Counted from the first letter of the stretch, positions 25,580 through 49,754 are shown. The stretch: 64,000 bases of DNA from IMGVR_UViG_3300050120_000230:62001-126000, one strand, 5' to 3'. The notes: a model not told the origin generated them from the sequence alone. Made by a program: numbers and translations.

Positions 25580-27505
25580 ATGCCTTCCGTTGACAGCAGC
25601 CGCGTTAAGACTACCGGAACCGGTGCAATTACCTATGCCGATCAAAACTCGGCCAATTCTGCCGCCGATGCGGCTGCCGCCGATATCGCACCGGATCAGG
25701 TGATTGTCCGCTCTGTTCAGGGCGACAACATCGGCGACGGAGAAGGCATTTTCGCGGGGTCGAACGGCTCCGATAGCGTCATGCTGCAATTCAAGTCGCT
25801 CCAAGCTGGCGACGGAATCAACATTGCGGACGACGGCTTCACGATCACCATCACGAACACCGCCAACAGCGGCGGTGGTGGCGGGGGCGGCGGTGGTCCG
25901 TCTGACGGATACCATCTCACGCTCGGCAATGCGGTCACCGAAGGCGACGGTTCTTGGAGCGGCGGCGCCGTGGCTCTGACCGACAGCACGTCGGTTTCGA
26001 ACGCGGTCGATAAGATCAACACGCTTCTGGGTCTCCTTGTCCCGGCTGGCCCAACCGCTTTCCCCGGCGGCTCGCTGGCTGTCATCAATACGGTCGGTAA
26101 CAACCCTGTTTTGGCGCTCAGCGCCGCAGATCACGCAAACTCCGGTATCTCGGCGGGCTCTTCCGTTACCCGTATCGTCACCTCTTCGGTGTCGAGCAAC
26201 GTCTTCAACGACGTGGGTCCGGGTGAAAGCGGAACGATCACCCTGCTCATCAACAATGCTTCGGCTGCGGCACATACGCTGAACGGCACCAGCGACAACG
26301 GCACTTACAGTGGCCTCGTCATCGCTGACCAAAAAGCGTTCCCTGTTTCTCAGCCGGGTTTCTGGAAATCCATCGACGTGTCCGTTGCGGGCGCGGGTGT
26401 GGCGCCGGGCGTCAACAAAATGAAACTGAGCCACAGCGGCGCGGGCACGACCAATGAAGTCGTGTTTGTGCGCGATGACATGGTCTCCACTCCGACGATC
26501 AGTCCGAGCAGCGTCACGGAATCGTCCAACGGCGCCGTGGCTTTCTCTTCCGGTGTTCCGCACTACGGTGCGAATGCAAACCTGCTGGTCGGGCTCTCGT
26601 TCACGAACCTGTCTGGTGAAACCTACTACGGCGGCACCGATGTCCTCACGGTCTCGGGCACCAACGGCGTGCTGGCCGATCAGACTTTCAGCTATGCAAA
26701 CCTCGGCATCAACACCCCGGTCACCCACCAGATCACTTCGGCTACGGCCGTCACCCCGGTCATCGTTCCGGTCAACGGCACGACCCACGGCTCTGGCCTG
26801 ATCCAAGGCACGATCAAGAATGTGAATGGCGCCAGCGGCGTTACTTCACTTTCCTCTTCCATCGTGTTGGTCAAGCGCGGCGCGGCTGCGAGCAACAAGG
26901 TTGACGAACTTAGCATTCCGGTTGCGGGCCTTGGCTCCGCACCGAACAACAACAATGCAATCCGTGTGAACATCGGGGCGACCGGCGATGAACCGACTGG
27001 TTCGGTTACCTCGTGGGATGCGACGGCTACTCTCCCGACCTACGAAGCGGCGGTTGTCGCGGGCATTCTGTCGAACAATCAGACGAACTATCTGACTGGC
27101 TTCCTACCGGTTGGCCCGAACCTTTCGACTGGCCGTAACGGCGCGCAATACGCCACGTTCAGCTTCCAACGTTCGGCTGTCTCCACGTTCAAGATCAACG
27201 TGACCGGCACCTACCACGGTGTCTGGATCAAGCTGCCGGGCGTCTCGGACAACGGCACGATCTCGCCCAACGCCACCAACGGCTGGTGGGATGCGACCAA
27301 GTCCTACAACGGCGCGGGCGTCCCCGGTAACGCCAGCGACCCTTCAGCGGGTTGCGCGGTCGGCTCGGTCATGGCGGGAGCAAGCGGAGCTTACTCGATT
27401 ACGTTTGGTCCCCAAACCTCCACTAACTCGAACTCGAATACGATCCTCGTTCGCATTCGTCTGGACGCTGGTCAGAGCATCACTGCTCTCAGCTTCAGCA
27501 ATTAA
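25580..27505 (+). CDS. virion structural / fibre-associated protein
   Basis: G/S/T/N-rich, TAAATA at 25550-25555, paralog of 47925..49754. Confidence 0.75.
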   Translation: MPSVDSSRVKTTGTGAITYADQNSANSAADAAAADIAPDQVIVRSVQGDNIGDGEGIFAGSNGSDSVMLQFKSLQAGDGINIADDGFTITITNTANSGGGGGGGGGPSDGYHLTLGNAVTEGDGSWSGGAVALTDSTSVSNAVDKINTLLGLLVPAGPTAFPGGSLAVINTVGNNPVLALSAADHANSGISAGSSVTRIVTSSVSSNVFNDVGPGESGTITLLINNASAAAHTLNGTSDNGTYSGLVIADQKAFPVSQPGFWKSIDVSVAGAGVAPGVNKMKLSHSGAGTTNEVVFVRDDMVSTPTISPSSVTESSNGAVAFSSGVPHYGANANLLVGLSFTNLSGETYYGGTDVLTVSGTNGVLADQTFSYANLGINTPVTHQITSATAVTPVIVPVNGTTHGSGLIQGTIKNVNGASGVTSLSSSIVLVKRGAAASNKVDELSIPVAGLGSAPNNNNAIRVNIGATGDEPTGSVTSWDATATLPTYEAAVVAGILSNNQTNYLTGFLPVGPNLSTGRNGAQYATFSFQRSAVSTFKINVTGTYHGVWIKLPGVSDNGTISPNATNGWWDATKSYNGAGVPGNASDPSAGCAVGSVMAGASGAYSITFGPQTSTNSNSNTILVRIRLDAGQSITALSFSN

Positions 27506-27520
27506 TCAAAGGCATTTGCA

Positions 27521-30500
27521 ATGACCATTTCAGATCAAGATAAGGTAGACTTCCTCTGGAAGAAAGTGATTTTCGGTTACACGAAGACTGCTTCTGGAAC
27601 TGTCAAGCTCGGCTCGAACGAGAGCATTGCCTCGCCGTTCCCTGTGAACCCGGATAACATCTGGGCTGAAGCTGACCAGATCGCGGCGTCTCCTACGGCG
27701 AACACAACCGCGCAGGTTGGTGTCTTCAAGGGTGCAACGCGTATCCAAATGACGGTGGACCCGTCTTCCCCGCCGAACCAAACGTGGTTGGCGACGGGCA
27801 CCCACAATCTGCTCACCAGCCTGATGGGCGACTTCATTTCGCCGATCTACGGCCCCGGCTACAACGTGGCTGCCTATATCGGTGATCCGAACGTCGGCCC
27901 GGCCGCGCGAATTTTCCCCGATACGACGAACGAAGAGTTCGTGTTCGATTACTCGGCGGGCGTGCTGAATTTCCTCGGAAACATTCCGGCTTCGAAGCCT
28001 GCCACTATTGGCTCTGGCACAGTCTCGGTTTCCACGAACGGCGTCTATCTTGAAGCCTATCGCTACATCGGCACCAAGGGCGGCGGTGGATCGAGCGGTT
28101 CATTCGTCTCCAAGACCGGCGACACGATGTCCGGCCCGCTGGTGTTCGACTACACCTCTAACTCTGGCCAAACCGTTTTGGTGTTCTCGAACACTACAGC
28201 AAACGCCTTCGCCGGTATCGGGTCTCTGCAATCCGGCGAAACCCGCATCTTTGCCGATAGCAACAATGCTCTGAGCTTCGGTCACGTCTCCACGACGGAT
28301 GGCGTCACCTATCACGAAGACATGCGTCTCGGCGCTGATGGCGTCCTGAACATCGGCACCGGCAGCGGAGATGGTTTCATTACCGTCGATAACGGCAATC
28401 GCATCGTGTTCGGTGATATCGCCAACGGTTCGGTCAATGAGCAGATGGTTATCGATGCCAATGGCGTCGTCTACATCGGCGGCAACATGGTCTACCACAC
28501 CGGCAACCTCGATCTTGAGTCTCTGACTCTGACGAACACCGGTGTGACCGCAGGCACCTACACCTCCACAAACATCGTGGTTGATGCTCAAGGTCGCATC
28601 CTATCCGCCAGCAATGGTTCGGGCGGCGGCGGTGGTGGCGGCAACGGCACGGTGACCGAAGTCAGCATCGGTGGCTCGACCAGTGTTTCTGTTTCGGGCG
28701 CTCCTATCACGACAGACGGCACGTTCGTCATCGATCTGACCAATACTGGCGTTTCGGCTGGCACCTATGCGAAGGTCAGCGTTGACGCCAAGGGCCGCGT
28801 CCAATCGGGTTCTGGCCTCGCCAGCGGCGACGTGACCTCGGCTCTGGGCTTCACGCCGCTTCAGCACAACGAAACGATCACTGTCTCGGGAGACGTTACC
28901 GGCTCAGGCACGTCTTCGCTTGCTCTGACGCTCACCAACTCCGGCGTCACGGCTGGCACCTACAACAAAGTCATCGTCGATGCGAAGGGCCGCGTCGTCG
29001 GCTCCGGCGCGCTGACCTCGTCGGATGTTGATACGGCGCTGGGCTATACCCCGACCAATGCCGCCACGGCCATTGTCTTCACGGGCGATGTCACGGGTTC
29101 GGGCACCAATCCGATCAACCTGTCTCTGGCCAATACTGGTGTCGCAGCAGGCACATATACTCTCGCAACTTTGGTTGTCGATGCGAAAGGCCGCGTTCTG
29201 GCAGTCTCCAATGGCAGCGCCGTTGGCGGTTCCAACGGAACGGTTACGAGCGTCTCGGCAGTCGGTTCGGCCGACATCCACGTCAATGGTTCGGCGACGA
29301 TCACCACCACGGGTACTTTCACTTTCGATCTGGCCAACACCCCGGTTGCGGCAGGCGTCTACTCGCTCGCCACGATCTCGGTTGATGCCAAGGGTCGTAT
29401 CATCGCGGCGGCCAACGGCACAGCGGGCTCCGGCACGGTTACTAGCGTGGGCGTCAGTTCCACGACGTTGAACGTCTCTGGTAGCCCGGTCACTACGGCT
29501 GGCGTCATCTCTATCGACCTGACGAACACCGGCGTCACTGCTGGCACCTATGAAAAGGTGACCGTGGATGCACAAGGCCGCATTCATGCAGGTGCTGCTC
29601 TCGCAAGTGGTGATGTGACTTCGGCTCTGGGCTTCACTCCGCTTCAACACAACGAAGCGATCACCATTTCTGGCGACGCGGCCGGAACGGGTGCATCTGC
29701 AATCGCTTTGACGTTCGCTAACACTGGCGTCGCGGCGGGCACTTATTCTGCCGCAAACATCGTCGTTGACTCCAAGGGTCGTATCCTCTCGGCTGCCAAC
29801 GGCGCGGCCGGTGGCGGAAGCGGCACGGTTACCTCTGTGGACGTTACGGGTTCGGCCGACATCTCGGCAGTTGGTGGACCAATCACAGTCTCGGGCGCTA
29901 TCGCTCTGGGTCTATCGAACACCGGCGTCGTCGCTGGCACCTATACTCTCACCAACCTGACGGTTGACTCCAAGGGTCGTATCACCTCGATCCAGAATGG
30001 CACCGCTTCCGGCGCCGGAACTGTTACCTCAGTTTCGGTCACCGGCGACGGCGCGATCTCGTCCACCGGCGGGCCGATCACCAACACGGGCACAATCGCT
30101 CTCACGTTGTCCAACACGGGCGTTGCACATGGCACCTACACGAAGGTCATCGTTGATCTCCAAGGCCGTGTGACGGGCTCTCTGGCCCTCGCAAACACAG
30201 ACGTGACGACAGCCCTCGGCTTTACGCCGATTGCCAACACGATCATCGATCTCGGCTACACCCCGCTTCAGCACAACGAAAGCATCACCGTCGTTGGTGA
30301 TGTGGTCGGCGTTGGTTCGACCACTCTTTCGCTGGCTCTGCAAAACACCGGCGTGACCGCAGGCACCTACGAAAAGGTGACTGTGGACGCAAAGGGTCGG
30401 GTTCTCTCCGGCGGCGCGCTCGCCTCCGGCGATGTCACCACGGCGCTGGGCTTCACTCCGATTTCCGGCATCGTCAGCGGAGACGTTACGACGGCGCTGG

Positions 30501-31393
30501 GCTTCACTCCGCTTCAGCACAATGAGACCATCACGGTCTCCGGCGACGCTTCAGCCACCGGCACAACGACTCTGGCTCTGACGCTGGCCACCACTGGCGT
30601 CGCGGCGGGCACCTACACGAAGTTCACCGTTGACACCAAGGGCCGCGTCCTCACCGGTCTCGCTCTGGCGAACACGGATGTAACGACGGCGCTGGGCTTC
30701 ACTCCGCTTCAGCACAACGAAACGATCACCCTGTCGGGTGACGTGGTTGGCTCTGGTGCAAATGCTATCGCCACCACGCTGACGAACACCGGCGTGACAC
30801 CGGGCACCTACACCTCCACGAATATTGTGGTCGATGCGAAGGGCCGTATCACGGCTGCTTCGAACGGCACTGGTGGCGGTGGTGGTTCTCTCGCGATCAC
30901 GAAGGCAAACGCTTCCATCGTTTCCGCAGCTTCGACGCTGAACTTCACCGGTAACGGTGTGACCGTCGTGGACCAAGGTTCTGGTGTAGCTCACATCGAC
31001 ATTCCGAGCAACGTCGAATGGGTTTCGTTCCTGTATTCGGGCACCACGCCTCAGCTTACGGGCGGTGATGCAATTCAAGCCAATTCGGCTGGCGTTGTCG
31101 CGACGATCACTGATGGTTCGACTTCGACCGTCACGTTCACGTTCACCGGATATCCTTTCCCGCCGACCTCCATTGCGGTCATGGGCCAGTCATATACTGC
31201 GAACGTCTTCAACTATCAGAACATGAACCCGACCTTCACGAGCAGTGCGATTCCGGGTGGAAACACCAGTGCGGCTCCGTCGATGTTTGGTGCGTTCTCT
31301 TCGATCTCGTTGAAAATTCCGGGTGGTGTTACGGGGGCTTCTACTACGAGCGCCCTGCAACGTCCGCGCGGTTACGTGATGTTCAAGTTCTAA
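27521..31393 (+). CDS. long fibre protein with tandem repeats
   Basis: 12 copies of L.NTGV.AGTY....VD.KGR interleaved with ALGFTP and GTVTSV modules. Confidence 0.85.
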   Translation: MTISDQDKVDFLWKKVIFGYTKTASGTVKLGSNESIASPFPVNPDNIWAEADQIAASPTANTTAQVGVFKGATRIQMTVDPSSPPNQTWLATGTHNLLTSLMGDFISPIYGPGYNVAAYIGDPNVGPAARIFPDTTNEEFVFDYSAGVLNFLGNIPASKPATIGSGTVSVSTNGVYLEAYRYIGTKGGGGSSGSFVSKTGDTMSGPLVFDYTSNSGQTVLVFSNTTANAFAGIGSLQSGETRIFADSNNALSFGHVSTTDGVTYHEDMRLGADGVLNIGTGSGDGFITVDNGNRIVFGDIANGSVNEQMVIDANGVVYIGGNMVYHTGNLDLESLTLTNTGVTAGTYTSTNIVVDAQGRILSASNGSGGGGGGGNGTVTEVSIGGSTSVSVSGAPITTDGTFVIDLTNTGVSAGTYAKVSVDAKGRVQSGSGLASGDVTSALGFTPLQHNETITVSGDVTGSGTSSLALTLTNSGVTAGTYNKVIVDAKGRVVGSGALTSSDVDTALGYTPTNAATAIVFTGDVTGSGTNPINLSLANTGVAAGTYTLATLVVDAKGRVLAVSNGSAVGGSNGTVTSVSAVGSADIHVNGSATITTTGTFTFDLANTPVAAGVYSLATISVDAKGRIIAAANGTAGSGTVTSVGVSSTTLNVSGSPVTTAGVISIDLTNTGVTAGTYEKVTVDAQGRIHAGAALASGDVTSALGFTPLQHNEAITISGDAAGTGASAIALTFANTGVAAGTYSAANIVVDSKGRILSAANGAAGGGSGTVTSVDVTGSADISAVGGPITVSGAIALGLSNTGVVAGTYTLTNLTVDSKGRITSIQNGTASGAGTVTSVSVTGDGAISSTGGPITNTGTIALTLSNTGVAHGTYTKVIVDLQGRVTGSLALANTDVTTALGFTPIANTIIDLGYTPLQHNESITVVGDVVGVGSTTLSLALQNTGVTAGTYEKVTVDAKGRVLSGGALASGDVTTALGFTPISGIVSGDVTTALGFTPLQHNETITVSGDASATGTTTLALTLATTGVAAGTYTKFTVDTKGRVLTGLALANTDVTTALGFTPLQHNETITLSGDVVGSGANAIATTLTNTGVTPGTYTSTNIVVDAKGRITAASNGTGGGGGSLAITKANASIVSAASTLNFTGNGVTVVDQGSGVAHIDIPSNVEWVSFLYSGTTPQLTGGDAIQANSAGVVATITDGSTSTVTFTFTGYPFPPTSIAVMGQSYTANVFNYQNMNPTFTSSAIPGGNTSAAPSMFGAFSSISLKIPGGVTGASTTSALQRPRGYVMFKF

Positions 31394-31405: not shown

Positions 31406-33364
31406 ATGTTCATTGACATCCCAGCGAAAGTTATTTCGGGCACAGCCGACACGATCAATGCATTTCAATTCTGGCCGTATGAAACGCCGGGTGACATCTA
31501 TTGGTCGGGCGGCTCGGCGCCCAAATACTATCAGTGGAATGTCACTGTAAACATCACGGAACAAACCCACAGCAGCAATAAGACTCGCAAACCGTTCGCA
31601 TTCAACGGTAGTGATGTGTCTGTCGGTGACTATATGGCAGATACCGTGAATGGTGTTGCGGTGAAAATTGTCAGTATTTCCAGCAAAAGTGACACGCAAA
31701 TCACATGCCTCGTCGAGGATGTGCTGCGTTACAACACTTTCCGCAACCCAAACCAATTGGCTGTTGGTATTTTCGCCGAACGAAGCAGTGTGCTGATCTT
31801 CCAATTGAACGAAGAGGGTCTACCCATCGTCGATAACTCGCCGTCATCGGTGAGTGCCAATTTCTATGCCAATCTCTCTTCTCGCTTCATCAACATGGAG
31901 CAAAGCTATAATTTCGTCCTGAACAAACCCGCTCATGGTTTTGCTTTGGGTGATCTCATCGGCGCTGATCCTCACGGTAATACGTTTGTCTTGGCGAACT
32001 CGGCATACCCGTATCTCATCGGCACGGTGACCAATGTCGATTTGGGACCGGACCAGTTCATGGTCAACCCGTTCCAAAAAGTCATAGATGGATACCCGTC
32101 GCTGATCGGTAACGTCGCGACGATCATCTATGCAGACCCAGTAGACGAAGGCGAATATTCGCTGACCGGACAACAGCCTGTTCTCATCAAGCTGCGTCAA
32201 CAGACGAATACCGTGGTCATTGGGTCCAACCTCGATAGCAATTCGTCCGTCGATGTTGGGAGCACATTCACTCTCAACGGTGAAGAAATCGTGGTCGCAA
32301 ATGTTGGTTCGCCAAATGATTTTGTGACAGCTTGTAATTTGCAGTCGTCGAATACATCGGTCATGGCTGCAATGATTGAAAACGCGCCATCCGTTACGAC
32401 TTCTCCTGCGTTGATTAATGACTTTTCGGTCGTGGCGTTGCAACTGCCAGCCTCGGCAAAAATCAATGGTGTGACGGTCACTTTCACGACTTCGACCAGT
32501 GGTTCTAGTTCTCTTGGTCCCGGTTTCGCTGACCAGTTTGATATTGCGGCCGACATCAATACCGCCGCAATTTCTGGCATTGTCGCTTCTGCCGACTCTT
32601 CCGGTTTGACTCTGCGGAATGATGATCTGGCTCCAATCGTGTTGGAAAACATCGGCGTCGATGGATTGGGAAATCCGTTTGCGGGCGCGCACTCTTCGAC
32701 CGGCTTGGCGTTGCTGACATCTCTGGGCGACAGTTTCATCCAATTGACGGGTAACGGCGCCATTGCCATCAATCTTTTCGATACGGTCAATTCTCCGACA
32801 CAAGACTTTGGCCTCATCAGTGCTGAAAACGGAATCAAAGCCGCTGCCATGACTATCGAGCAGGGCATCCGTGAAGCATCGACCTATGTAGTTTCCAATA
32901 TCGCAGCGCGTGATGCTCTTACCGCTTTTGTCGGTGACCAAGCCTATGTCACCGATCAAGGAAATGGCGAATGGGCGTTCTTCATCTTCACGCTAGATAG
33001 TGTGTGGGTTGAGATCGCCAACAAGGACTCGTCGGAAACCGACGCTCAGTCTGTCGAACTCGCAATCTCCGCGACTTCCAATGCGTCGGCGACTATTCAC
33101 ACGATTTCGAACAACCGTAGGGTCACGTTCGTAACGGTCACGGTTCTTGACGCGTTCAACGCGCCCGCCACGGTCACCGTGGGCGACAGCGCGGATCACA
33201 CACGTTTGATGACCGTAGATCAGAATGATTTGACAGCAATCGGAGATTATTCGACCACTCCGTCATATACCTATGCGGGTGGTTTTGACACCGATATCAA
33301 CCTATACTTTAATGCGGACGGTGCGACTGTCGGCAATGCAATTGTGGCCATCACGTATACTTAA
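31406..33364 (+). CDS. virion structural protein
   Basis: within the structural operon; C-terminal part paralogous to 46827..47909. Confidence 0.7.
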   Translation: MFIDIPAKVISGTADTINAFQFWPYETPGDIYWSGGSAPKYYQWNVTVNITEQTHSSNKTRKPFAFNGSDVSVGDYMADTVNGVAVKIVSISSKSDTQITCLVEDVLRYNTFRNPNQLAVGIFAERSSVLIFQLNEEGLPIVDNSPSSVSANFYANLSSRFINMEQSYNFVLNKPAHGFALGDLIGADPHGNTFVLANSAYPYLIGTVTNVDLGPDQFMVNPFQKVIDGYPSLIGNVATIIYADPVDEGEYSLTGQQPVLIKLRQQTNTVVIGSNLDSNSSVDVGSTFTLNGEEIVVANVGSPNDFVTACNLQSSNTSVMAAMIENAPSVTTSPALINDFSVVALQLPASAKINGVTVTFTTSTSGSSSLGPGFADQFDIAADINTAAISGIVASADSSGLTLRNDDLAPIVLENIGVDGLGNPFAGAHSSTGLALLTSLGDSFIQLTGNGAIAINLFDTVNSPTQDFGLISAENGIKAAAMTIEQGIREASTYVVSNIAARDALTAFVGDQAYVTDQGNGEWAFFIFTLDSVWVEIANKDSSETDAQSVELAISATSNASATIHTISNNRRVTFVTVTVLDAFNAPATVTVGDSADHTRLMTVDQNDLTAIGDYSTTPSYTYAGGFDTDINLYFNADGATVGNAIVAITYT

Positions 33365-33472: not shown

Positions 33473-36400
33473 ATGGCTAATATCAAGAACTTCGGTATCG
33501 TTGGTGTTGGCGCCGGGGTCCAGTTTGGTAAGGGTGGCGCGCAGCTTATCCAAACCACTGGAACCTTTGCTGCGAAGAATGCTGCGGGCAATGCTTTTGT
33601 CCGTTTCCAGATCGCAGATGGCGCCAGCGACGGTGATGCTGTTACGTTCAATCAGCTTACGAACGCCGTAAGCTCGATTGGCAACACCACCACTGCCATC
33701 CAAACCGAACTCGACGCTGTCGAAGCCGGTGCTGGTCTGGGCACCGATGGCTCCTACGTGGCGCCGGTCGGCTCGAACTACCTCGCAAATGCAACGACTC
33801 TGAAGGCAGCGGACGCGCTGCTCGACGCAGCCATTTTTGCGGAAGCCACCACGCGCGCTGCTGCTGACTCGGCTCTGTCGAACGCAATCGCCAACGCGGC
33901 TGCTTCTACGGGCGGCATTCAAGCTGAACTCGACCAAGTCGAAAACTCGGTTGGTCTGGGCACCGATGGCACGCTGACCCTCGCGGCCGGTAACTACCTC
34001 GGTTCCGCAACCGATCTGGTCAATGCAATCGAAACCCTCGACGGCGTCCTCGGCGACACCGCCGCCATCGCTGCTGAAGCGAACTCCACTGCGACACAAG
34101 CGTCCTCGGACGTTGCGAACGCACTGGGTGAAATCACGCAGAACACCACTGACATCGCGAACGTCTCCACTCGTGTTGACGTTCTGGAAGCAAACGAAAC
34201 CTCGGTCACTGGCCTACTGACCGGTCTCCGTACCGATGTTGATTCCAACTCGGCCATTCTCGCTGGTGAAATCACCCGCGCCGAAGCCGCTGAAGGCAAC
34301 CTCAGCAACTCGATCACCACCGAAGTTTCACGCGCCACGGCAGCCGAAGGCGTTCTCACCAACGCAGTCGTCACCGAAACCTCGCGTGCAACTGATGCTG
34401 AAGGTGTCCTGACCACCGCAGTCGTGACCGAAACGTCCCGCGCCACGGCAGCCGAAGGCGTTCTCACCAACGCAGTCGTCACCGAAACCTCGCGTGCAAC
34501 GTCCGCTGAACTGGCTCTGGGCAACTCCGTTGCCGCTGCCAACGCTGCAATCGCCGCCGAAGTCGTCCGTGCAACTGGCGCTGAAGCGGCTCTCGATGGT
34601 CGTCTGACCACCGTTGAAACCGACTACATCAACAAGGACGGCACCGTCGCAATGACCGGCGCCCTCGACATGGGCAACAACGTTATTCATAACGTTTCGA
34701 CCCCGGTTGATGACAACGACGCAGCGAACAAGGCTTTCGTCACCGGCCTCATCGCTGGTATCGGCAACGCCTTCAACTACAAGGGCACTGTCGCACCGGG
34801 CGTCGATGCTGGTAACGCAACTGTTCTGGCTTCCACGCCCGCAGTTGGTGATTACTACAAGGCCACGAGCGACGGTTACCTGATCGGCGCCGACGATGGT
34901 TCGGTTGCTTTCCACGTTTTCCACAACGATGGTGTTGTTCGCAACACTGACGGCGGCTGGGATACGATTGGTCACACCGACTCGACCGTTGCTGGAACGT
35001 CTGGCGAAATCACCGTCACGGGTACTGTTGACACCGGCTACGTGGTTGGTATCGATGCGACCTATACGGCCGCTCGCCATCAAGAAGTGACGGACGAAGC
35101 TAACGCTCGCGCCGCCGCTGACGCCACCCTCACTGCCGCCATCGCTGGCGCTAATGCGGCTGTCGCAACTGAAACCACCCGTGCCATGCAGGCCGAATCG
35201 GACCTGACCAACTCGGTCGTCTCCGAAACGTCCCGTGCAACTACTGCTGAAGGTGTTCTCACCAACGCAGTCGTGACCGAAACCTCGCGTGCAACCGCTG
35301 CTGAAGGTGTTCTCACGAACGCCGTCGTCACGGAAACCTCGCGTGCAACCGCTGCTGAAGCTCTGATCGCAAACTCCGTTTCGACGGAAACCGCTCGCGC
35401 TGAAGGCATTGAAGCCGGTCTCCGCACCGACGTTGACGCAGCTAACGCCGCGATCATCGCCGAAGTGACCCGCGCTGAAGGTATCGAAGCCGGTCTCCGC
35501 ACCGACGTTGACGCCGCAACCGCAGCAGTTGGAACGGAAACGGCTCGCGCCGAAGCCGCCGAAGCCGCACTGGCCAACTCTATTGCTTCCACCAACTCCA
35601 ACGTCTCGACCCTGTCGGGCCGCGTGGATGTTCTGGAAGCCGCTGAAGAGCACGCCGTTTCGGACGAAGCCAACGCTCGTATCGCCGCCGACAACCTCAT
35701 CAACGCCAACGTCGCTGCTGTCGCTTCGAATGTCGCTAACGCGCAATCGGAAATCGACTCCATCGAAACCGGTGCTGGTCTGGATGCAAACGGTCACTAC
35801 GTCGCCAACACTGGTGCTCACTACATTGCGACTGCAACGAGCCTCTTCGATGCAGACAACATGCTGGACAACGCTGTCGCCGCACTGGCAACGGAACTGG
35901 CCACCCTGTCGCAAGACACCATCAAGACTGAAGACGGCCTGAACTCGGTTCACGTCGCTGACGGCCTCATCACGACGAAGTTGGACGTTGCTGGAACCGC
36001 AACCGTGGTCTCGACCATGGTCGCAACCGCCAACACCAACACGGCTCTCGCACTGGACTTCAGCGCGGCAGACGAAGTCAAGCTGGCAGCTTCCGGTACT
36101 TCGGCCGACGTTGATCTTCGCCTCACCGCGCAAGGTTCTGGCCACGTCATCATCGGTGAAACCGGTGTTGGTGTGATCCAAGCTGACGACGGCTACGACA
36201 TGACCATCGCAGGCGGCACGGGTGCAAACCTGAACCTCCAAGGCACCTTGGTCAACGTCCAAGACGGCAGCGGCACCAACGTCGCGGTCTTCGCTGGCGT
36301 TGCTGGTGCAACTGCATGGGCCACCGTCGCGAACGGCAACACCGCTGTCACCTTCGGTGCGGCTGGTGCAGCTTCCAACCTCGATCTCGTCTTCGCACCC

Positions 36401-36835
36401 AAGGGTGGCGGCGTCGTCAATATGTCTTCGGCTCGCGTCATCAACGTCGCGAACGCCACGGCATCGACGGACGCAGTCAACAAGGGTCAACTCGATGCAG
36501 CCCTCTCGACCGCTTCGGTCGGCGTGGTCAAGACTGTCGTCGCCACTCTGCCCGCCACTTCGGGCTCGGTGACCCTCGGCACGATCACGGGCACCGTCCT
36601 GCGCGTCCGCGTTCTGGTCAGTAACACCTACGACGCTGGTTCCACCATCGTTGTCGGTAACTCGACTACCGCGAACGATCTGGCCGCTGACACGGACATC
36701 GATGAAGGCACCGCTGGCATCTATGTCATCGAAACCGCGAAGGACTACTCCGCAATCACCGTCACCGCGACCGTCACGAATACGACTGGTCTGAACGGCG
36801 CTGCGAAAGTCATCGTCGAATATCTGGCTTCGTAA
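33473..36835 (+). CDS. coiled-coil fibre protein
   Basis: 18-aa ETSRATAAEGVLTNAVVT repeats, DA(V/A)N-type neck motifs, TAAATA at 33395-33400, AGGAG RBS. Confidence 0.85.
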   Translation: MANIKNFGIVGVGAGVQFGKGGAQLIQTTGTFAAKNAAGNAFVRFQIADGASDGDAVTFNQLTNAVSSIGNTTTAIQTELDAVEAGAGLGTDGSYVAPVGSNYLANATTLKAADALLDAAIFAEATTRAAADSALSNAIANAAASTGGIQAELDQVENSVGLGTDGTLTLAAGNYLGSATDLVNAIETLDGVLGDTAAIAAEANSTATQASSDVANALGEITQNTTDIANVSTRVDVLEANETSVTGLLTGLRTDVDSNSAILAGEITRAEAAEGNLSNSITTEVSRATAAEGVLTNAVVTETSRATDAEGVLTTAVVTETSRATAAEGVLTNAVVTETSRATSAELALGNSVAAANAAIAAEVVRATGAEAALDGRLTTVETDYINKDGTVAMTGALDMGNNVIHNVSTPVDDNDAANKAFVTGLIAGIGNAFNYKGTVAPGVDAGNATVLASTPAVGDYYKATSDGYLIGADDGSVAFHVFHNDGVVRNTDGGWDTIGHTDSTVAGTSGEITVTGTVDTGYVVGIDATYTAARHQEVTDEANARAAADATLTAAIAGANAAVATETTRAMQAESDLTNSVVSETSRATTAEGVLTNAVVTETSRATAAEGVLTNAVVTETSRATAAEALIANSVSTETARAEGIEAGLRTDVDAANAAIIAEVTRAEGIEAGLRTDVDAATAAVGTETARAEAAEAALANSIASTNSNVSTLSGRVDVLEAAEEHAVSDEANARIAADNLINANVAAVASNVANAQSEIDSIETGAGLDANGHYVANTGAHYIATATSLFDADNMLDNAVAALATELATLSQDTIKTEDGLNSVHVADGLITTKLDVAGTATVVSTMVATANTNTALALDFSAADEVKLAASGTSADVDLRLTAQGSGHVIIGETGVGVIQADDGYDMTIAGGTGANLNLQGTLVNVQDGSGTNVAVFAGVAGATAWATVANGNTAVTFGAAGAASNLDLVFAPKGGGVVNMSSARVINVANATASTDAVNKGQLDAALSTASVGVVKTVVATLPATSGSVTLGTITGTVLRVRVLVSNTYDAGSTIVVGNSTTANDLAADTDIDEGTAGIYVIETAKDYSAITVTATVTNTTGLNGAAKVIVEYLAS
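34316..35365 (+). repeat. two blocks of coding 54-bp tandem repeats
   Basis: GAAACCTCGCGTGCAAC...GAAGGTGTTCTCACCAACGCAGTCGT units at about 34316-34506 and 35216-35365. Confidence 0.8.
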
Positions 36836-36928: not shown

Positions 36929-37068
36929 TGGAACCGCGTGCCGGATTTGCACCGGCTATTTCTCACTCTCGGCCAGCTTGCTGGCTTCCGCTATATGACT
37001 ACGATTACCTCGTCCGAAGTCTCAAATACTTTGGAGTCAACGACTTTCGCATCACGGAGTGACGCGGA
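36929..37068 (-). ncRNA. tRNA-like RNA (acceptor stem, T-arm, CCA) with non-tRNA interior
   Basis: 5' TCCGCGT pairs with 3' ACGCGGT-T-CCA; T-arm GCCGG-TGCAAAT-CCGGC; TTGACA-N17-CATGGT promoter upstream. Confidence 0.65.
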
Positions 37069-40286: not shown

Positions 40287-40293
40287 ATACAGG

Positions 40294-44509: not shown

Positions 44510-44554
44510 CTTTCAAGTATAAACCGCCCGCCCTTCCTCACGCTAAATATATCA

Positions 44555-45604: not shown

Positions 45605-45605
45605 A

Positions 45606-46401: not shown

Positions 46402-46441
46402 CTGAGTATTTATGCGCGCTATCGGATGATGTTGTCTATAA

Positions 46442-46470: not shown

Positions 46471-46479
46471 CTAGTTCAT

Positions 46480-46710
46480 TTACTCGTCGTTGACGAAGAC
46501 GCCGGTGACTTTCACCGATACGATGGCCGTCAGTGGAATGTAGAGTCGGGGCGCCGTATCCGGCATGTTCGAGAAGATCAGCAGGCCGTTGTCCAGAACT
46601 TCGGCCATTCCAGCGCCGAGATAGGTAGTTCCATCCACGCACACGATGTCGTAGGTATCAGTGGGATTGTCTGAAGCATAAGTGCTCAGAGCCGTAGTAA
46701 CATTCGACAT
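46480..46710 (-). CDS. small hypothetical protein
   Basis: AAGGA RBS; bounded by hairpins. Confidence 0.6.
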   Translation of the reverse strand: MSNVTTALSTYASDNPTDTYDIVCVDGTTYLGAGMAEVLDNGLLIFSNMPDTAPRLYIPLTAIVSVKVTGVFVNDE

Positions 46711-46826
46711 ATCAAAAGTCCTTTACTCGGTTAATACCGTAACTTTGTCTCAAAGCAAGACGATAGTCAAAAAGAAACGCCCCCAAGTTTCCTTGAGGGC
46801 GCCCTTTATTCATTGACGAACTTGGA

Positions 46827-47909
46827 TTAGGCCCAAGTAATCGTGATCTTCGCCGCACCTTGTGTCGGGCTACCGGTGTAGTAGACCAGAACGTCGGTGT
46901 CTTCGGCTGAATCGAACTGATAGACCGGATACACGACGTAAACGCCGAGTGTTTGCAGGTCCACTTCGGAGTTGTCCAGCAGACGGGAGTTGTTGGCCGC
47001 ATCACCAATGGTGATATCGGCGCTGCCGTCGAACACGGTCGTAACTTCGATGCTCACTTCAACGACGCGTGTGCCGTTGCCAACCGTGCCAACCAGATCA
47101 TCGCCGTCACCAACGAAGTTGCTGTTGCTGATCGGAATGGATTGGGTCAGGGCGTCGGTGCGTGCCGAAGCTTGCGTCGCGATGCACTGCCATGCAGAAC
47201 CAGTCCACAGGTAGTCAGCGAACTCACCCGTGCCAGCGTTAGCCGGATCACCGCTGGCGTCGAGGACGTGGGCGATGTCACCGACGTTCGGCACCAGAGC
47301 ATCACGAGCCGTGATGTCAGCGACGACACTGGTCTTGGAAGATTCACCGATAGCAGCGATGCTGGTGTCCAGCGTCGTGCCGATGTAGTGATAGACTTCG
47401 ATGTAAACGCTGTCCGTGGCGACGCCAACAACGCCCGAACCGATAGTGGCGGTGATGCCCGAAGGAATCGTGCCAGTGAAGTTCAGGGTGCCGGAGACGT
47501 AGTCGAAGACGTATTCTTGGCCAGTCGTATCAGGGAAGATACGAGCAGCTTTGGCGCCGTTGGGATCACCGAGCCACACGCGGACGAGATAACCCGAACC
47601 GAAGGTGGTGGGGATGAAGTTCCCCATGCCAGCGCCCCAAGTCACGTTCGCCGGAGAAGTGGTGTCCATGACCAGTGCGATACGTGCAGCGCCGTAATAC
47701 TTGTGCACGGTGGCCGTGGTCGAACTCGGCGGAATGAGAGGAATGCTCGTGGTGTCCGATTGCGTCCACACGTTCGTGGCGTAAACGGGAAGCGGCGAGG
47801 AAACGGTTTCGTTGGAACCAGACTTCGTCAGCGAAGACGCGGTCTTGGAGGTTCCGAAGATCACCTTCTTCCAGAGGAAGTCCAGTTTTTCTGTGTCAGA
47901 AATGGTCAT
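46827..47909 (-). CDS. virion structural protein (mosaic paralog of 27521 and 31406 ORFs)
   Basis: MTISD..K.DFLWKKVIFG N-terminus; VVADITARDAL and terminal beta domain. Confidence 0.75.
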   Translation of the reverse strand: MTISDTEKLDFLWKKVIFGTSKTASSLTKSGSNETVSSPLPVYATNVWTQSDTTSIPLIPPSSTTATVHKYYGAARIALVMDTTSPANVTWGAGMGNFIPTTFGSGYLVRVWLGDPNGAKAARIFPDTTGQEYVFDYVSGTLNFTGTIPSGITATIGSGVVGVATDSVYIEVYHYIGTTLDTSIAAIGESSKTSVVADITARDALVPNVGDIAHVLDASGDPANAGTGEFADYLWTGSAWQCIATQASARTDALTQSIPISNSNFVGDGDDLVGTVGNGTRVVEVSIEVTTVFDGSADITIGDAANNSRLLDNSEVDLQTLGVYVVYPVYQFDSAEDTDVLVYYTGSPTQGAAKITITWA

Positions 47910-47924
47910 TGGTCAATGCTCCCC

Positions 47925-49754
47925 TTAGTTCGTGAAGCTGAGAGCAGTGATCGACTGACCGGCATTCAAACGAATGCGGACGAGGATTTGATTGCCCGTT
48001 GCGGAGGTTGAAGAAGCGGTGCCGAAAGTCATCTGGAAGGTGCCCGAAGAACCGTTCATCACGGCGCCAGAAGCGCAACCAGCGGTCAATTCGCCAGCAC
48101 CACCGGGAACGCCAGCGCCCGCGTAGGCGACAAAGGCGTTCCACCATGCACCACCAACTGCGTTCGGCGAGACGCCGGAGTTGTCGGAGACGCCCGGCAG
48201 GCCGATCCACACACCGGCGTAGGTGCCGGTGACGGTGATCTTGAACTGCGAGAGCGCGGTGCGGTTGAAGGAGAACGTCACATACTGTGCAGCGTCTTGA
48301 CCCGAGAGGTTCGGACCAGCGGGCAGAAAGCCCGTGCTGTAGTTGGTCGTGTCGTTCTTGAGGGCGCCGCCGACGACCGTTGCATCCCAAGTGTGGATGG
48401 AAGCCGATTGGACCCAAGTGTTGGCTGCGAGGACCGGAGTGTTGCCCGTAGCTTGGCCGACGCGAACCGCGTTGCTGTTGCTCGGAGAAGAACCCAGACC
48501 AGTGACCGGGACGCTGAGTTCGTCAACGCGAGTGGTCGTGCCGTTCTTGACCAGAATGACGGAGGACGGAGAGGCAGTGCCACCCTGACCGTTGACGTTC
48601 GTGCCAGCCAGCGAAATCGTGCCCGAGTTGTGCACGTTCGAGGGGTTGACGCTGAGAGTCACCGTGGACATCGCCGTGGCCGTCGTGGTGTTTGCCGCGA
48701 TGGGGGTGGAGATACCGACGTTGGCGTAGGTGAAGGTCTGCGTCGAAAGGATCGAGTTGGTTGCACCAATCGACAACGGCGAACCGTTGAAGTAGGTTTG
48801 ACCAGCGAGGTTCGAAATCGAACCACCGACCGTCAGGGTAGCGCCCGTGTTGTAGTGCGGGACGCTCGACGAGAAGGCGACGGTGCCGTTCGAGAGTTGG
48901 GCCACAGTCGGCGACGTGATCGCCGGAGTTGCGACCAAGTTGTCACGAACGAACGTGACGAGGTTCGTAGAACCAGCGGCCGTATCGGTGATCTTGGCGT
49001 TGTTGACGCCGAGTTGCGTTGCCGCGCCAGAAACCGAGACGTTGACCGATTTCCAGAAGCCCGGAGTAGCGACCGGATAATCTGCTTGGCCGGAGATAAC
49101 GAGGCCGCCGTAGGTGCCGTTGTCTGCGATACCCGTCAGGGTGTGTGAACCAACCGAAGAGTTGTTGACCAGCAGCGAAAGCGTGCCGCTTTCACCCGGA
49201 CCCATGTTCGTGAACGAGTTCGAGCTTGCGAGTGTCGTTGATGTGATACGCGTGACGGCCGTACCGGCAGTGGTGCCGGTGCTGGCGTTGTCTTGCGCGC
49301 CGGAAGCCAAAACAGGCGAAGAACCAACCGAAGCGACGGTCAGTGCGTTTGCGTTCGGGAAGTTCGGCGGGGCGTTCGGGACGAGCTTGCCGAGGATTTC
49401 GTTGAGTTGGTCAACTGCTTCGGAAACCACGGTGCTGTTGGTCAGCGGGACCGCACCGGGGGACCAAGAACCGTCGCCGTAAGCAACGATGTCGCCAAGA
49501 ATAAGGTGGAAACCATCTGCAACGCCTGCGTTTGAGATGGAGTTGCTCAGGCTCGAATCGAGCGCGTTAAGCTGCGAAAGGGTAACAACGTCGGTATTCG
49601 CGACGGCGGCTGCCGCGCGAATAGTGGTCAACGAGATACCATCGGCACTCCGCGCCTCGACAACCGATCCATTCACCTTAAGACGAGGACCAGCCTTGCC
49701 AAGTTGAAGATCGGGGCCAACGCCCGAAAGTCCGAAGTTTTTTGTGTCTGCCAT
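47925..49754 (-). CDS. virion structural protein (mosaic paralog of 33473 and 25580 ORFs)
   Basis: MA..KNFG..GVG...Q.GK.G N-terminus; body ends ILVRIRLNAGQSITALSFTN; TAAATA at 49787-49792. Confidence 0.75.
   Translation of the reverse strand: MADTKNFGLSGVGPDLQLGKAGPRLKVNGSVVEARSADGISLTTIRAAAAVANTDVVTLSQLNALDSSLSNSISNAGVADGFHLILGDIVAYGDGSWSPGAVPLTNSTVVSEAVDQLNEILGKLVPNAPPNFPNANALTVASVGSSPVLASGAQDNASTGTTAGTAVTRITSTTLASSNSFTNMGPGESGTLSLLVNNSSVGSHTLTGIADNGTYGGLVISGQADYPVATPGFWKSVNVSVSGAATQLGVNNAKITDTAAGSTNLVTFVRDNLVATPAITSPTVAQLSNGTVAFSSSVPHYNTGATLTVGGSISNLAGQTYFNGSPLSIGATNSILSTQTFTYANVGISTPIAANTTTATAMSTVTLSVNPSNVHNSGTISLAGTNVNGQGGTASPSSVILVKNGTTTRVDELSVPVTGLGSSPSNSNAVRVGQATGNTPVLAANTWVQSASIHTWDATVVGGALKNDTTNYSTGFLPAGPNLSGQDAAQYVTFSFNRTALSQFKITVTGTYAGVWIGLPGVSDNSGVSPNAVGGAWWNAFVAYAGAGVPGGAGELTAGCASGAVMNGSSGTFQMTFGTASSTSATGNQILVRIRLNAGQSITALSFTN

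What the first reader, a model, noticed from the sequence alone, without database searches (positions are those of the whole stretch)
25580..49754. Two-gene minus-strand cassette is a domain-shuffled condensation of the four-gene fibre operon
Seen: 47925..49754 joins the N-terminus of 33473 (MA..KNFG..GVG...Q.GK.G) to the body of 25580 (DG.HL.LG...GDGSWS.GAV through ILVRIRL.AGQSITALSF.N). 46827..47909 joins the N-terminus of 27521 (MTISD..K.DFLWKKVIFG, ARIFPDTT..E.VFDY) to the C-terminus of 31406 (VV..I.ARDAL plus the terminal beta domain). A similar terminal domain also ends 33473. Inference: shared terminal domains act as modular connectors, so long and short subunits could chain into a branched or segmented appendage such as head or tail fibres.
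Basis: partly seen in the sequence, partly recalled or inferred. Interest (0 to 1): 0.65.

Follow-up and report, generated by a model that had tools for sequence, protein, structure and literature searches.

The report
Modular jumbo-phage fibre genes with plug-and-socket ends
Six genes of a giant bacterial virus encode surface-fibre proteins built from a small set of interchangeable end-pieces. The same end-pieces always meet at the same gene boundaries in dozens of related viruses, which suggests the proteins join end to end, although no contact was shown directly.

Summary
P0005 (47925-49754, minus) has the N-terminus of P0004 (33473) and the body of P0001 (25580). P0006 (46827-47909, minus) has the N-terminus of P0002 (27521) and the C-terminal domains of P0003 (31406). 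The same terminal jelly-roll also ends P0004.

The window belongs to a 415-kb Atu_ph07/PA5oct-type jumbo myophage. Homologues of these modules were detected by mass spectrometry in Atu_ph07 and PA5oct virions.

The two-gene cassette is not a recent condensation. It is an old paralogue, conserved in synteny in many 0.4-0.6-Mb phage contigs and in Salicola phage SCTP-2.

The new result comes from about 75 related loci. Genes ending in module B are followed by genes starting with module C in 43 of 44 unique cases. X-ending genes are followed by E-starting genes in 9 of 9 cases. There are 26 unique cases of a D2-ending gene followed by an A-starting gene.

I read these boundaries as head-to-tail docking joints. 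The long operon would be a serial fibre, A1-B | C-repeats-X | E-D | A-coil-D2. The short cassette, A-B | C-D, would be a segment whose free ends fit the D|A joint.

Binding is inferred, not shown: the one complex prediction gave no verdict. Whether the fibres sit on the head or the tail is unresolved.

The parts
25124..25522 (+). 132-aa protein directly upstream of the long operon. It is a homologue of PA5oct gp185 (virion protein by MS) and of ORFs upstream of related fibre loci.
   Evidence: phrog_13657 / phrog_14467 'virion structural protein'. A jackhmmer search hits PA5oct L005 1315-1749 and loci L029, L030, L033, L035.
25580..27505 (+). P0001, 641 aa. N-terminal module A1 (aa 1-105, ending in a Gly9 run), then body module B (aa 106-641; nt 25895-27502).
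   Evidence: phrog_8578, E 6e-199; sister to L021_9728.
27521..31393 (+). P0002, 1290 aa. Plug module C (aa 1-187; nt 27521-28081), a linker domain, about 12 repeats of ~65 aa (aa 341-1110), and C-terminal module X (aa 1101-1290; nt 30821-31390).
   Evidence: (phrog_9417, E 4e-74; tail-fibre repeat phrog_7389). Module X is shared with L021, L071 and many proteins that sit upstream of E+D genes.
31406..33364 (+). P0003, 652 aa. Module E (aa 1-488), D1 (491-554) and the D2 jelly-roll (557-651; nt 32876-33358). It is the orthologue of PA5oct gp181 and SCTP-2 gene 16.
   Evidence: (34% identity over the full length to PA5oct and SCTP-2).
33473..36835 (+). P0004, 1120 aa. Plug module A (aa 1-72; nt 33473-33688), a long alanine-rich coiled coil with 18-aa periodic blocks, a YadA-stalk-like neck motif (aa 988-1015), and terminal D2 (aa 1029-1117; nt 36557-36823).
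   Evidence: (PF05662 at 28.3 bits against a cut-off of 28.4).
36940..36956 (+). Terminator-like hairpin after the long operon.
   Evidence: This is a consensus scan only.
47925..49754 (-). P0005, 609 aa. Plug module A (aa 1-72; nt 49539-49754), then body module B (aa 77-609; nt 47928-49526).
   Evidence: The AF2 model has pLDDT 88.6 and shows tandem beta-sandwich domains plus a C-terminal beta-sandwich at 408-609.
46827..47909 (-). P0006, 360 aa. Plug module C (aa 1-182; nt 47364-47909), then D1-D2 (aa 188-360; nt 46830-47348).
   Evidence: The AF2 model has pLDDT 84. D2 (aa 250-360) is a jelly-roll.
46775..46804 (-). Strong terminator-like hairpin (13-bp stem) just after the P0006 stop codon.
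49887..49906 (-). Terminator-like hairpin upstream of P0005. With the hairpin at 46775-46804 it makes the short cassette look like a transcription unit of its own.

Best explanation
The six genes encode subunits of modular virion fibres of an Atu_ph07/PA5oct-type jumbo myophage. Each protein has an N-terminal 'plug' (A, A1, C or E), a variable shaft, and a C-terminal 'socket or tip' (B, X or D1-D2).

Across related phages the same C-terminal module of one gene always meets the same N-terminal module of the next gene: B|C, X|E and D|A. I read these boundaries as head-to-tail docking joints. The precedent is the T4 long tail fibre, where gene order equals assembly order.

On this reading:
- The four-gene operon builds a serial fibre: P0001 (A1-B) :: P0002 (C-repeats-X) :: P0003 (E-D1D2) :: P0004 (A-coiled coil-D2).
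- The two-gene cassette is an old paralogue of the B|C core carrying an A plug and a D1-D2 end: P0005 (A-B) :: P0006 (C-D1D2).
- The cassette's free ends are the two halves of the D|A joint. It could therefore plug onto a D knob (of P0003, P0004 or P0006) as a branch or an extension. It would use the same plug as P0004 and present the same kind of end as P0003.

What is shown: the domain sharing, the boundary rules, the age of the paralogy, the virion presence of homologues, and the fold classes.

What is inferred: that the boundaries are physical joints, the polarity (N-terminus proximal), and the place on the virion.
For: 1. Module sharing is highly significant.

2. The B|C rule holds in 43 of 44 unique cases, with a gap of -1 to 24 nt.
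- It holds across at least six different N-terminal contexts of B proteins: A, A1, C, part of E, the phiCbK-type N-terminus, and long unknown N-termini.
- It holds across four contexts of C proteins: C alone, C+D1D2, C+long shaft, and C+B.
- Proteins of architecture C+B are themselves followed by another C-start gene. Examples are CcrSC, CcrColossus, Atu_ph07 gp326/325/324, L029 and L037.

3. The duplicated DNA runs as one piece across the B|C gene boundary: short-cassette positions 548-1968 align to long-operon positions 632-2063 at 65% identity. The junction sequence is nearly the same in both copies.

4. The most conserved stretches over 41 pairs are the C-terminal domain of B (aa 458-609) and residues 1-20 and 101-140 of C. 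In the monomer model the N-terminal ~45 residues of C have low confidence.

5. X|E holds in 9 of 9 unique cases. D2|A is seen in 26 unique pairs, plus two more boundaries in an unrelated 347-kb record.

6. Homologues were detected in Atu_ph07 and PA5oct virions. The C-only protein gp324 is in the Atu_ph07 virion, so it is not merely a chaperone.

7. D1-D2 resembles the knob and foot of the trimeric R4C/RcGTA tail fibre (Z 7.8-8.2) and the tip of the phage 7-7-1 tail fibre (Z 7.8).

8. Both cassettes are conserved in the same convergent synteny in relatives: L008, L009 and L011 have a P0004-like gene on the opposite strand 7-9 kb away, and L012 and L021 lie on one contig.
Against: - No direct evidence of contact. 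The complex prediction of B (77-609) with C (1-190) gave no verdict. It is listed only as tried.
- Gene adjacency can persist through co-expression or plain synteny without physical docking. Most D|A pairs are orthologous arrangements (E+D followed by A), so they are less independent than the B|C cases.
- A-start genes are not always preceded by a D2 end. Exceptions are 14 A+B genes and 6 tandem 'second A' genes. D2 is also a terminal domain with no downstream partner in 26 unique genes. D2 therefore cannot be only a socket.
- B folds confidently as a monomer of beta-sandwich domains. This is unlike classical intertwined trimeric fibres.
- phiCbK gp73 and gp74 were not among the 8 proteins detected in phiCbK virions, although that survey had low depth.
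Confidence: 0.55

Rival explanations
1. Parallel, independent fibres. Each protein attaches by its N-terminal module directly to a virion site (baseplate, neck or capsid), and its C-terminal module is a receptor-binding tip. Shared N-termini then mean shared virion sites, and shared C-termini mean shared receptors. The gene-boundary rules reflect only co-inheritance and co-expression.
For: This is the orthodox reading of mosaic phage fibre genes. D2 is a terminal jelly-roll or lectin-like 'foot' with no downstream partner in P0004- and P0006-type genes. The A+B genes of short cassettes have no D2-ending gene upstream. The complex prediction gave no support (which is not evidence either way).
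Against: - It does not explain why B is never the end of an operon (43 of 44 cases followed by C).
- It does not explain why C+B fusions are again followed by a C gene.
- It does not explain why the B|C unit is kept intact while both outer ends are swapped.
- The same B|C pair occurs in siphophages (phiCbK group) and in myophages with unrelated capsid genes and different tail types. A direct common virion site for C is therefore unlikely.
Confidence: 0.3
2. Capsid-anchored 'hairs' with reversed polarity. The D2 jelly-roll is a cement-protein-like capsid-binding domain, so P0003, P0004 and P0006 sit on the head and project their N-terminal parts outward. These would be the capsid-associated whiskers seen on Atu_ph07 and the hairy fibres on the capsid and tail of phAPEC6.
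For: - The best structural neighbours of D2 are phage capsid cement proteins: KHP30 Z 11.0, Pam1 Z 10.5, KHP40 Z 9.6, GP4 Z 9.3, against about 8 for other jelly-rolls.
- Atu_ph07 has 'hairy whiskers' that are mainly capsid-associated (PMC6102473).
- phAPEC6 has unassigned fibres on hexamer centres and on the tail (PMC7247149).
- In phiCbK the B and C genes lie between the head genes and the candidate head-filament gene.
Against: - phiCbK-like phages have B and C but no D, so D cannot be the general anchor of B|C assemblies.
- In Atu_ph07 a D2-like domain was found only inside a 4450-aa open frame, away from the B/C genes.
- Z 9-11 at 12-15% identity for a jelly-roll is suggestive only.
- No standalone D2-like cement gene was found.
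- PA5oct-type phage MIJ3, which has the E+D and A proteins, is described with long kinked baseplate fibres rather than head hairs (PMC6892783).
Confidence: 0.2
3. C-start proteins are assembly chaperones or tip adhesins for the B protein, in the manner of lambda/P2 Tfa or T2/S16 gp38, and not segments of a chain.
For: A gene that immediately follows a fibre gene and acts on its C-terminus is the classical tfa/gp38 arrangement (established knowledge, not tested here). phiCbK gp74 is little more than the C module (232 aa).
Against: C proteins carry shafts of up to 2710 aa or a further B body. Atu_ph07 gp324 and gp325 are virion proteins by MS. The tip-adhesin variant is compatible with the best explanation and is really a special case of it.
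Confidence: 0.1
4. The two oppositely oriented cassettes form an inversion or recombination switch, like the Mu G segment, that swaps fibre ends.
For: The cassettes are convergent and share a similar B|C core.
Against: The inverted repeats are only 73-83% identical, and the longest near-exact stretch is about 18 nt. Third-codon-position identity is only modestly higher at the junction, 0.62-0.75 against 0.25-0.73 elsewhere. None of the genes scanned between the cassettes matched an invertase or recombinase family. Each paralogue has its own orthologues.
Confidence: 0.02

Closest known systems
Caulobacter phage phiCbK gp73/gp74, CcrColossus gp87/gp88/gp89 and Atu_ph07 gp326/gp325/gp324 (phrog_8578 + phrog_9417)
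   Same: These are direct homologues of modules B and C at 50-57% identity, with the same B|C gene boundary. The Atu_ph07 proteins are in virions by MS.
   Different: They are annotated only as hypothetical or 'tail protein', and no function or structure is published in the papers I could read. The phiCbK-type phages lack A, D and E and use another N-terminus. They are siphophages whose capsid genes are unrelated to the window phage.
T4 long tail fibre (gp34-gp35-gp36-gp37) and the T2/S16 gp38 tip adhesin
   Same: It works like this: adjacent genes encode successive segments joined end to end, and gp38 caps the tip of gp37 through its N-terminal domain.
   Different: No sequence or fold relation was found. 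B is a string of beta-sandwich domains, not an intertwined beta-helix. The joints here are inferred from gene order only.
Branched receptor-binding complexes of CBA120 (TSP1-4), G7C (gp63.1/gp66) and RaK2/K64-1-type jumbo phages
   Same: Paralogous fibre or spike proteins share N-terminal adaptor modules that dock on one another, which gives branched appendages (established knowledge). The window phage belongs to the wider Atu_ph07/PA5oct lineage next to the RaK2-like phages.
   Different: Pfam detected no T4 gp10-like or other named adaptor domains in the six proteins. No depolymerase domains were found. The modules here (A, C, E, B, X, D) are different families.
Pseudomonas phage PA5oct gp185 and gp181-gp179
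   Same: gp181 is the full-length orthologue of P0003 (34% identity). gp180 and gp179 begin with module A, and gp179 shares a coiled coil with P0004. gp185 is the homologue of the 132-aa protein upstream of P0001. All were detected in virions, and the gene order is the same.
   Different: PA5oct has no B or C modules. In their place it has a 2236-aa 'tail protein' and a 1006-aa 'minor tail protein'.
R4C/RcGTA tail fibre (rod-knob-foot) and the tip of the phage 7-7-1 tail fibre
   Same: D1-D2 aligns with the knob and foot (Z 7.8), and D2 aligns with the lectin-like foot (Z 8.2, rmsd 2.7 over 100 residues). The C-terminus of the 7-7-1 fibre gives Z 7.8.
   Different: Sequence identity is 8-12%, and the Z values are near the background for jelly-rolls. 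This is similarity of fold only.
Jelly-roll capsid cement proteins (Pam1, KHP30/KHP40, GP4, BPP-1)
   Same: These are the best structural matches of D2: Z 9.3-11.0 for the first four, and Z 6.5 for BPP-1, which is in the background range.
   Different: Cement proteins are small standalone proteins (124-155 aa in the matched chains). D2 here is the C-terminal domain of 360-1120-aa fibre proteins, and no standalone D2 gene was found.

Membership tests
phrog_8578 (module B; phiCbK gp73 family) | Full-length match to the family profile | tested here: met
   P0001 matches at E 6e-199 (profile positions 93-651 of 652). P0005 matches at E 4e-182.
phrog_9417 (module C; phiCbK gp74 family) | Match to the 231-position profile at the N-terminus | tested here: met
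   P0002 aa 1-226 at E 4e-74. P0006 aa 1-221 at E 2e-62.
phrog_4042 (module D) | Match to the 129-position profile at the C-terminus | tested here: met
   P0006 at E 5e-10 and P0003 at E 2e-6. P0004 is weak by PHROG (E 5.5e-4) but reaches E 7e-9 with a family-specific profile.
B|C gene-pair architecture (this report's rule) | A gene ending in B is followed within about 25 nt by a gene starting with C | tested here: met
   The gap is 15 nt in both window copies. The rule holds in 43 of 44 unique cases in relatives.
Serial multi-protein fibre of the T4 long-tail-fibre kind | Successive gene products physically joined end to end | tested here: inconclusive
   Only gene-order evidence is available. 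The complex prediction of B+C gave no verdict.
Serial multi-protein fibre of the T4 long-tail-fibre kind | Components present in the virion | tested here: met
   Met for homologues only: Atu_ph07 gp324-326 and gp287, and PA5oct gp179-181 and gp185. This was not tested for the window phage itself, which is uncultured.
Trimeric autotransporter YadA stalk (PF05662) | Score at or above the Pfam gathering threshold | tested here: not met
   P0004 scores 28.3 bits against a cut-off of 28.4. P0005 scores 17.2 bits. This is only a short neck-type motif (D.V...QL), so the proteins are not filed as members.
Jelly-roll capsid cement/decoration proteins | Jelly-roll fold similar to solved cement proteins | tested here: met
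   Z 9.3-11.0 to KHP30, KHP40, Pam1 and GP4 over 104-109 residues.
Jelly-roll capsid cement/decoration proteins | Small standalone protein bound on the capsid lattice | tested here: not met
   D2 occurs only as the C-terminal domain of three large proteins in this genome. A word search found no standalone relatives. Capsid binding cannot be tested with these tools.
Branched RBP adaptors (T4 gp10-like / CBA120 XD type) | Recognisable adaptor domain at the N-terminus | tested here: not met
   No such Pfam family was hit in any of the six proteins at E <= 0.1. There are also no PDB sequence relatives for P0002, P0003 or the P0005- and P0006-family profiles. P0001 and P0004 were not searched against PDB on their own.
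phiCbK head filament (gp76) | Homology of the long C-start proteins or any window protein to gp76 | tested here: not met
   tblastn and BLASTP gave no hit.

The most novel reading that the evidence does not exclude
The heterodimer P0005::P0006 (A-B::C-D1D2) is a self-compatible building block. Its D end could accept the A plug of another copy, or of P0004, and its A plug could fit the D knobs of P0003, P0004 or P0006. The phage could then assemble segmented or branched filaments of variable length from a few subunits. These filaments would be the so far unassigned 'hairy whiskers' of Atu_ph07-type jumbo phages. The same B|C joint would be what phiCbK-type phages use in their own accessory filaments.
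Probability: 0.15. Interest if true: 0.75.

Novelty: new variant of a known kind. Interest (0 to 1): 0.55.

Why it matters
Mosaic phage fibres are a known theme, but the families involved here (phrog_8578, 9417, 4042, 4302) have no assigned function and no solved structure.

They occur in model or cultured phages, including phiCbK, Atu_ph07, PA5oct and SCTP-2. The filaments, whiskers and kinked fibres of some of these have no identified proteins, and the same is true of the related jumbo phage phAPEC6, which was not checked for these modules.

The boundary rules B|C, X|E and D|A give a simple, testable grammar for which proteins should join which. That turns the question 'what are the hairs and filaments made of?' into a handful of pull-down and cryo-EM experiments in culturable phages. 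The rules could also guide annotation of fibre loci in metagenomic megaphages.

Tried and rejected
- Complex prediction of P0005 77-609 with P0006 1-190 scored 0.00, no verdict. It is evidence neither for nor against binding.
- I guessed that phiCbK gp75 is the D domain split off. This was rejected: profiles of D1 and D2 do not hit gp75 or Colossus gp90.
- I guessed that long C-start proteins (up to 2710 aa) are relatives of the phiCbK head-filament candidate gp76. This was rejected: no BLAST hit with or without the low-complexity filter.
- Recent gene conversion or an inversion switch between the cassettes was rejected.
- Stop-codon readthrough fusing B to C was rejected. P0001 and P0002 are in frame with one TAA between them, but the short cassette has two stops, and gaps in relatives are multiples of three in only 17 of 44 cases.
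- Megablast of both cassettes against phage genomes found nothing.
- Sequence searches of PDB with the two family profiles, P0002 and P0003 gave no relatives.
- A word search with D2 alone for standalone relatives found none.
- The search for related loci with the short A and D2 alignments failed because no conserved stretch was usable. It was replaced by a degenerate DNA pattern for the A motif.
- The fold of module C (aa 50-180) could not be assessed. Atlas leads (YomF_N, PTL_trimer) are weak.
- The B body gave only weak matches, Z <= 6.7, to Ig/FnIII tandems and to beta-sandwich domains of phage baseplate and nozzle proteins.
- The Pfam 'PsbR' hit in P0002 lies in Gly/Thr-rich repeats, and I take it as compositional.
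- The large representative-protein search and the reads tools were not used. No alternative genetic code was needed.

Full report
**1. What is in the sequence**

The region holds a plus-strand operon of four large genes:
- P0001, 25580-27505, 641 aa.
- P0002, 27521-31393, 1290 aa.
- P0003, 31406-33364, 652 aa.
- P0004, 33473-36835, 1120 aa.

About 10 kb further on there is a minus-strand pair: P0005 (47925-49754, 609 aa) and P0006 (46827-47909, 360 aa).

- P0001 106-641 matches P0005 77-609 at 55% identity, E 2e-170.
- P0002 1-185 matches P0006 1-178 at 53% identity, E 8e-57.
- P0003 489-651 matches P0006 189-359 at 34% identity, E 2e-20.
- P0004 1-72 matches P0005 1-72 at 36% identity, E 1e-6.

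A profile of the last ~95 residues of the P0006 family also hits P0004 1029-1117 at E 7e-9. The third claim therefore holds too.

I name the modules as follows:
- A: N-terminus of P0004 and P0005 (phrog_4302-like).
- A1: N-terminus of P0001.
- B: body of P0001 and P0005 (phrog_8578).
- C: N-terminus of P0002 and P0006 (phrog_9417).
- X: C-terminus of P0002.
- E: first 488 aa of P0003.
- D1-D2: C-terminus of P0003 and P0006 (phrog_4042). D2 alone ends P0004.

The modules occur nowhere else in the 415-kb record.

P0002 carries about 12 repeats of ~65 aa of the tail-fibre type. P0004 is a long alanine-rich coiled coil with 18-aa periodic blocks.

**2. What genome this is**

The window is positions 62001-126000 of a 415,409-bp IMG/VR virus record. 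It encodes a 980-aa tail sheath, a tail tube protein, a head-closure protein and a family-B DNA polymerase.

The sheath is closest to Agrobacterium phage Atu_ph07 and Sinorhizobium phage Phosso (47%), then the PA5oct group, then Salicola phage SCTP-2. The phage is therefore an uncultured jumbo myophage of that lineage. It has no homologues of the phiCbK capsid, scaffold or portal proteins.

**3. Relatives of the modules**

- B and C are shared at 50-57% identity with the phiCbK-like siphophages of Caulobacter and Brevundimonas, and with Atu_ph07, Phosso and SCTP-2.
- P0003 has full-length orthologues in PA5oct-type Pseudomonas phages and in SCTP-2.
- PA5oct gp181 (E+D), gp180 (A-start) and gp179 (A plus coiled coil) are annotated as detected in virions by ESI-MS/MS. 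So is gp185, the homologue of the 132-aa ORF at 25124-25522.
- In Atu_ph07 the three consecutive genes gp326 (X+B), gp325 (C+B) and gp324 (C) were all detected in the virion proteome, with 9, 13 and 6 peptides. gp287 (E part) was detected too (supplement of PMC6102473).

phiCbK gp73 and gp74 were not among the eight proteins detected in that phage (PMC3556154), which was a shallow survey.

**4. Age and direction of the duplication**

The fused architectures of the short cassette are not peculiar to this genome.
- Full-length P0006-type proteins (340-365 aa) and P0005-type proteins (~600 aa) occur on many metagenomic contigs of 0.4-0.6 Mb and more.
- The pair A+B / C+D1D2 is found intact in SCTP-2 (genes 230/231) and in 12 of the 35 loci fetched with the P0005-family alignment.
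- In a maximum-likelihood tree of B modules, P0005 groups with the short-cassette orthologues. P0001 is sister to the long-operon gene of contig 3300034072_000758, which also carries a short cassette. The C tree shows the same main groups.
- The convergent layout, with the long operon about 7-10 kb from an oppositely oriented short cassette, recurs in L008, L009 and L011.

The cassette is therefore an old, conserved paralogue and not a recent condensation.

At the DNA level the two copies align at ~65% identity as one piece that runs across the B|C gene boundary. The boundary sequence is nearly the same in both. What was duplicated is a B|C core, and the outer ends differ: A1 versus A, and repeats-X versus D1-D2.

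**5. The boundary rules**

I annotated all ORFs of about 75 related loci with module profiles. This gave three regularities.

(i) B|C. Forty-three of 44 unique genes ending in B are followed, after -1 to 24 nt, by a gene beginning with C. The one exception has its C gene 5 kb downstream.
- The rule holds whatever precedes B: A, A1, C, part of E, a phiCbK-type N-terminus, or long unknown N-termini.
- It holds whatever follows C: nothing, D1-D2, shafts up to 2710 aa, or another B.
- When C is fused to B (CcrSC, CcrColossus gp88, Atu_ph07 gp325, L029, L037), yet another C-start gene follows.

(ii) X|E. All 9 unique X-ending genes are followed by an E-start gene.

(iii) D|A. There are 26 unique cases of a D2-ending gene followed, after 10-152 nt, by an A-start gene. 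Two more such boundaries lie in an unrelated 347-kb record.
- The D2-ending genes without an A gene downstream are mainly the operon-terminal ones (P0004 type and P0006 type).
- The A-start genes without a D2 gene upstream are the A+B genes of short cassettes and tandem 'second A' genes, as in PA5oct gp179.

The four-gene operon thus reads A1-B | C-repeats-X | E-D | A-coil-D2. All three of its internal boundaries are of conserved types. The short cassette reads A-B | C-D, and its two free ends are the two halves of the D|A boundary.

**6. Structure**

AlphaFold2 models with family alignments are confident: P0006 has pLDDT 84 and P0005 has pLDDT 88.6.

*D2 (P0006 250-360)* is a jelly-roll.
- Its best neighbours are phage capsid cement proteins: KHP30 Z 11.0, Pam1 Z 10.5, KHP40 Z 9.6, GP4 Z 9.3.
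- Next come the lectin-like 'foot' of the trimeric R4C/RcGTA tail fibre (Z 8.2; D1-D2 against knob plus foot, Z 7.8) and the tip of the phage 7-7-1 tail fibre (Z 7.8).
- These values are only a little above the jelly-roll background, so they indicate a fold class and not a function.

*B* is a string of beta-sandwich (Ig/FnIII-like) domains with a C-terminal beta-sandwich at 408-609. All matches are weak, Z <= 6.7.

*Other parts:*
- The first ~45 residues of C are strongly conserved yet modelled with low confidence.
- Over 41 B|C pairs, the most conserved stretches are the C-terminal domain of B and residues 1-20 and 101-140 of C. This fits an interface but does not prove one.
- A contains a beta-hairpin followed by a 'D.V...QL' neck motif and a short helix. 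This motif scores just under the Pfam YadA_stalk threshold in P0004.
- There are no sequence relatives in the PDB.

**7. Mechanism proposed, and its status**

I propose that the boundary pairs are docking joints, so that products of adjacent genes join head to tail. This follows the T4 long tail fibre, with C proteins behaving like the gp38-type tip-binding adhesin and its extensions (the comparison rests on established knowledge).
- The long operon would form one serial fibre.
- The short cassette would form a shorter two-protein segment.
- Through its A plug and D1-D2 end, that segment could branch from or extend the long fibre. Alternatively it could compete with P0004 for the D knob of P0003.

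My estimates:
- The six proteins are modular virion fibre or adhesin subunits: about 0.9.
- B docks C: about 0.65.
- D docks A: about 0.45.

The only direct test available, a two-chain complex prediction of B with C, returned no verdict and counts for nothing either way.

**8. Where on the virion**

This is unresolved.

For a tail or baseplate fibre:
- P0002 matches tail-fibre repeat families.
- D1-D2 resembles the R4C fibre knob and foot.
- The PA5oct homologues lie among 'tail' genes.
- PA5oct-type phage MIJ3 is described with long kinked baseplate fibres.

For head or whisker structures:
- D2's best matches are capsid cement proteins.
- Atu_ph07 shows mainly capsid-associated 'hairy whiskers'.
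- phAPEC6 has unassigned fibres on the capsid and tail.
- The phiCbK B and C genes sit between head genes and the candidate head-filament gene.

B|C occurs in both siphophages and myophages with unrelated capsid genes and different tail types. The N-terminal module of the first protein (A, A1 or the phiCbK type) is therefore the likely virion-specific adaptor, and B|C is a portable core. This is inference.

**9. Comparison and novelty**

Modular, mosaic and branched phage fibres are well known. The families here are unannotated, and I found no description of the B|C, X|E and D|A grammar in the papers searched. I class it as a new variant of a known kind.

Noticed in passing
window 44420-45604 (+) and 42968-44509 (-): A 394-aa ORF with an ART-PolyVal ADP-ribosyltransferase domain (PF18760, E 4e-18). 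Its first ~90 nt overlap, on the opposite strand, the start of a 513-aa TPR protein that has a weak glycosyltransferase-9 match. The true start of the plus-strand ORF may lie further in.
   Followed up: no
window 50425-51945 (-), 51994-53040 (-): A histidyl-tRNA-synthetase-like protein (phrog_16140, E 3e-142) and a MazG-like pyrophosphatase lie just upstream of the short cassette.
   Followed up: no
window 37597-38232 (+), 38539-39894 (+), 40246-40932 (+), 42148-42756 (-): Genes between the two cassettes are not structural: a RyR-domain protein, an ATP-dependent DNA ligase, an endolysin-like protein and a DNA methyltransferase.
   Followed up: partly
window 25124-25522 (+): A 132-aa ORF just upstream of P0001 is homologous to PA5oct gp185, a virion protein by MS. 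It recurs upstream of fibre loci L029, L030, L033 and L035. It may be a further part of the fibre locus.
   Followed up: partly
window 27503-27523 and 47907-47927: P0001 and P0002 are in the same frame, separated by one TAA and five sense codons. The short cassette has TAA and TGA in that spacer. Spacer lengths in relatives show no frame preference (17 of 44 are multiples of 3), so readthrough is unlikely.
   Followed up: yes
window 27521-31393 (P0002 aa 408-469): A Pfam hit to PsbR (photosystem II 10-kDa protein; 29.1 bits, above the cut-off) falls in the Gly/Thr-rich fibre repeats. I take it as a compositional artefact.
   Followed up: no
Atu_ph07 NC_042013.1 135241-135489 (-): A D2-like jelly-roll (E 1e-10 with the D2 alignment) lies inside an open frame of 4450 aa. 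This giant protein may be another fibre or whisker component.
   Followed up: no
L037 10955-19087 (IMGVR_UViG_3300009103_000035): A C-start protein of 2710 aa follows a C+B protein. It is not related to the phiCbK head-filament candidate gp76 despite its similar size.
   Followed up: yes
L027 8627-14676 (IMGVR_UViG_3300024239_000355): This locus has unusual fusions, E(1-274)+B and C+B (1049 aa). It is also the only case where the next C-start gene lies 5 kb away instead of adjacent.
   Followed up: no
window 1-64000: ARAGORN found no tRNA gene in the window. Structural genes (sheath 56601-59543, tube 61802-63208, head closure 63208-63654) are interspersed with replication and nucleotide-metabolism genes (PolB 2422-5223, ThyX 6956-8020), as in other jumbo phages.
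   Followed up: no
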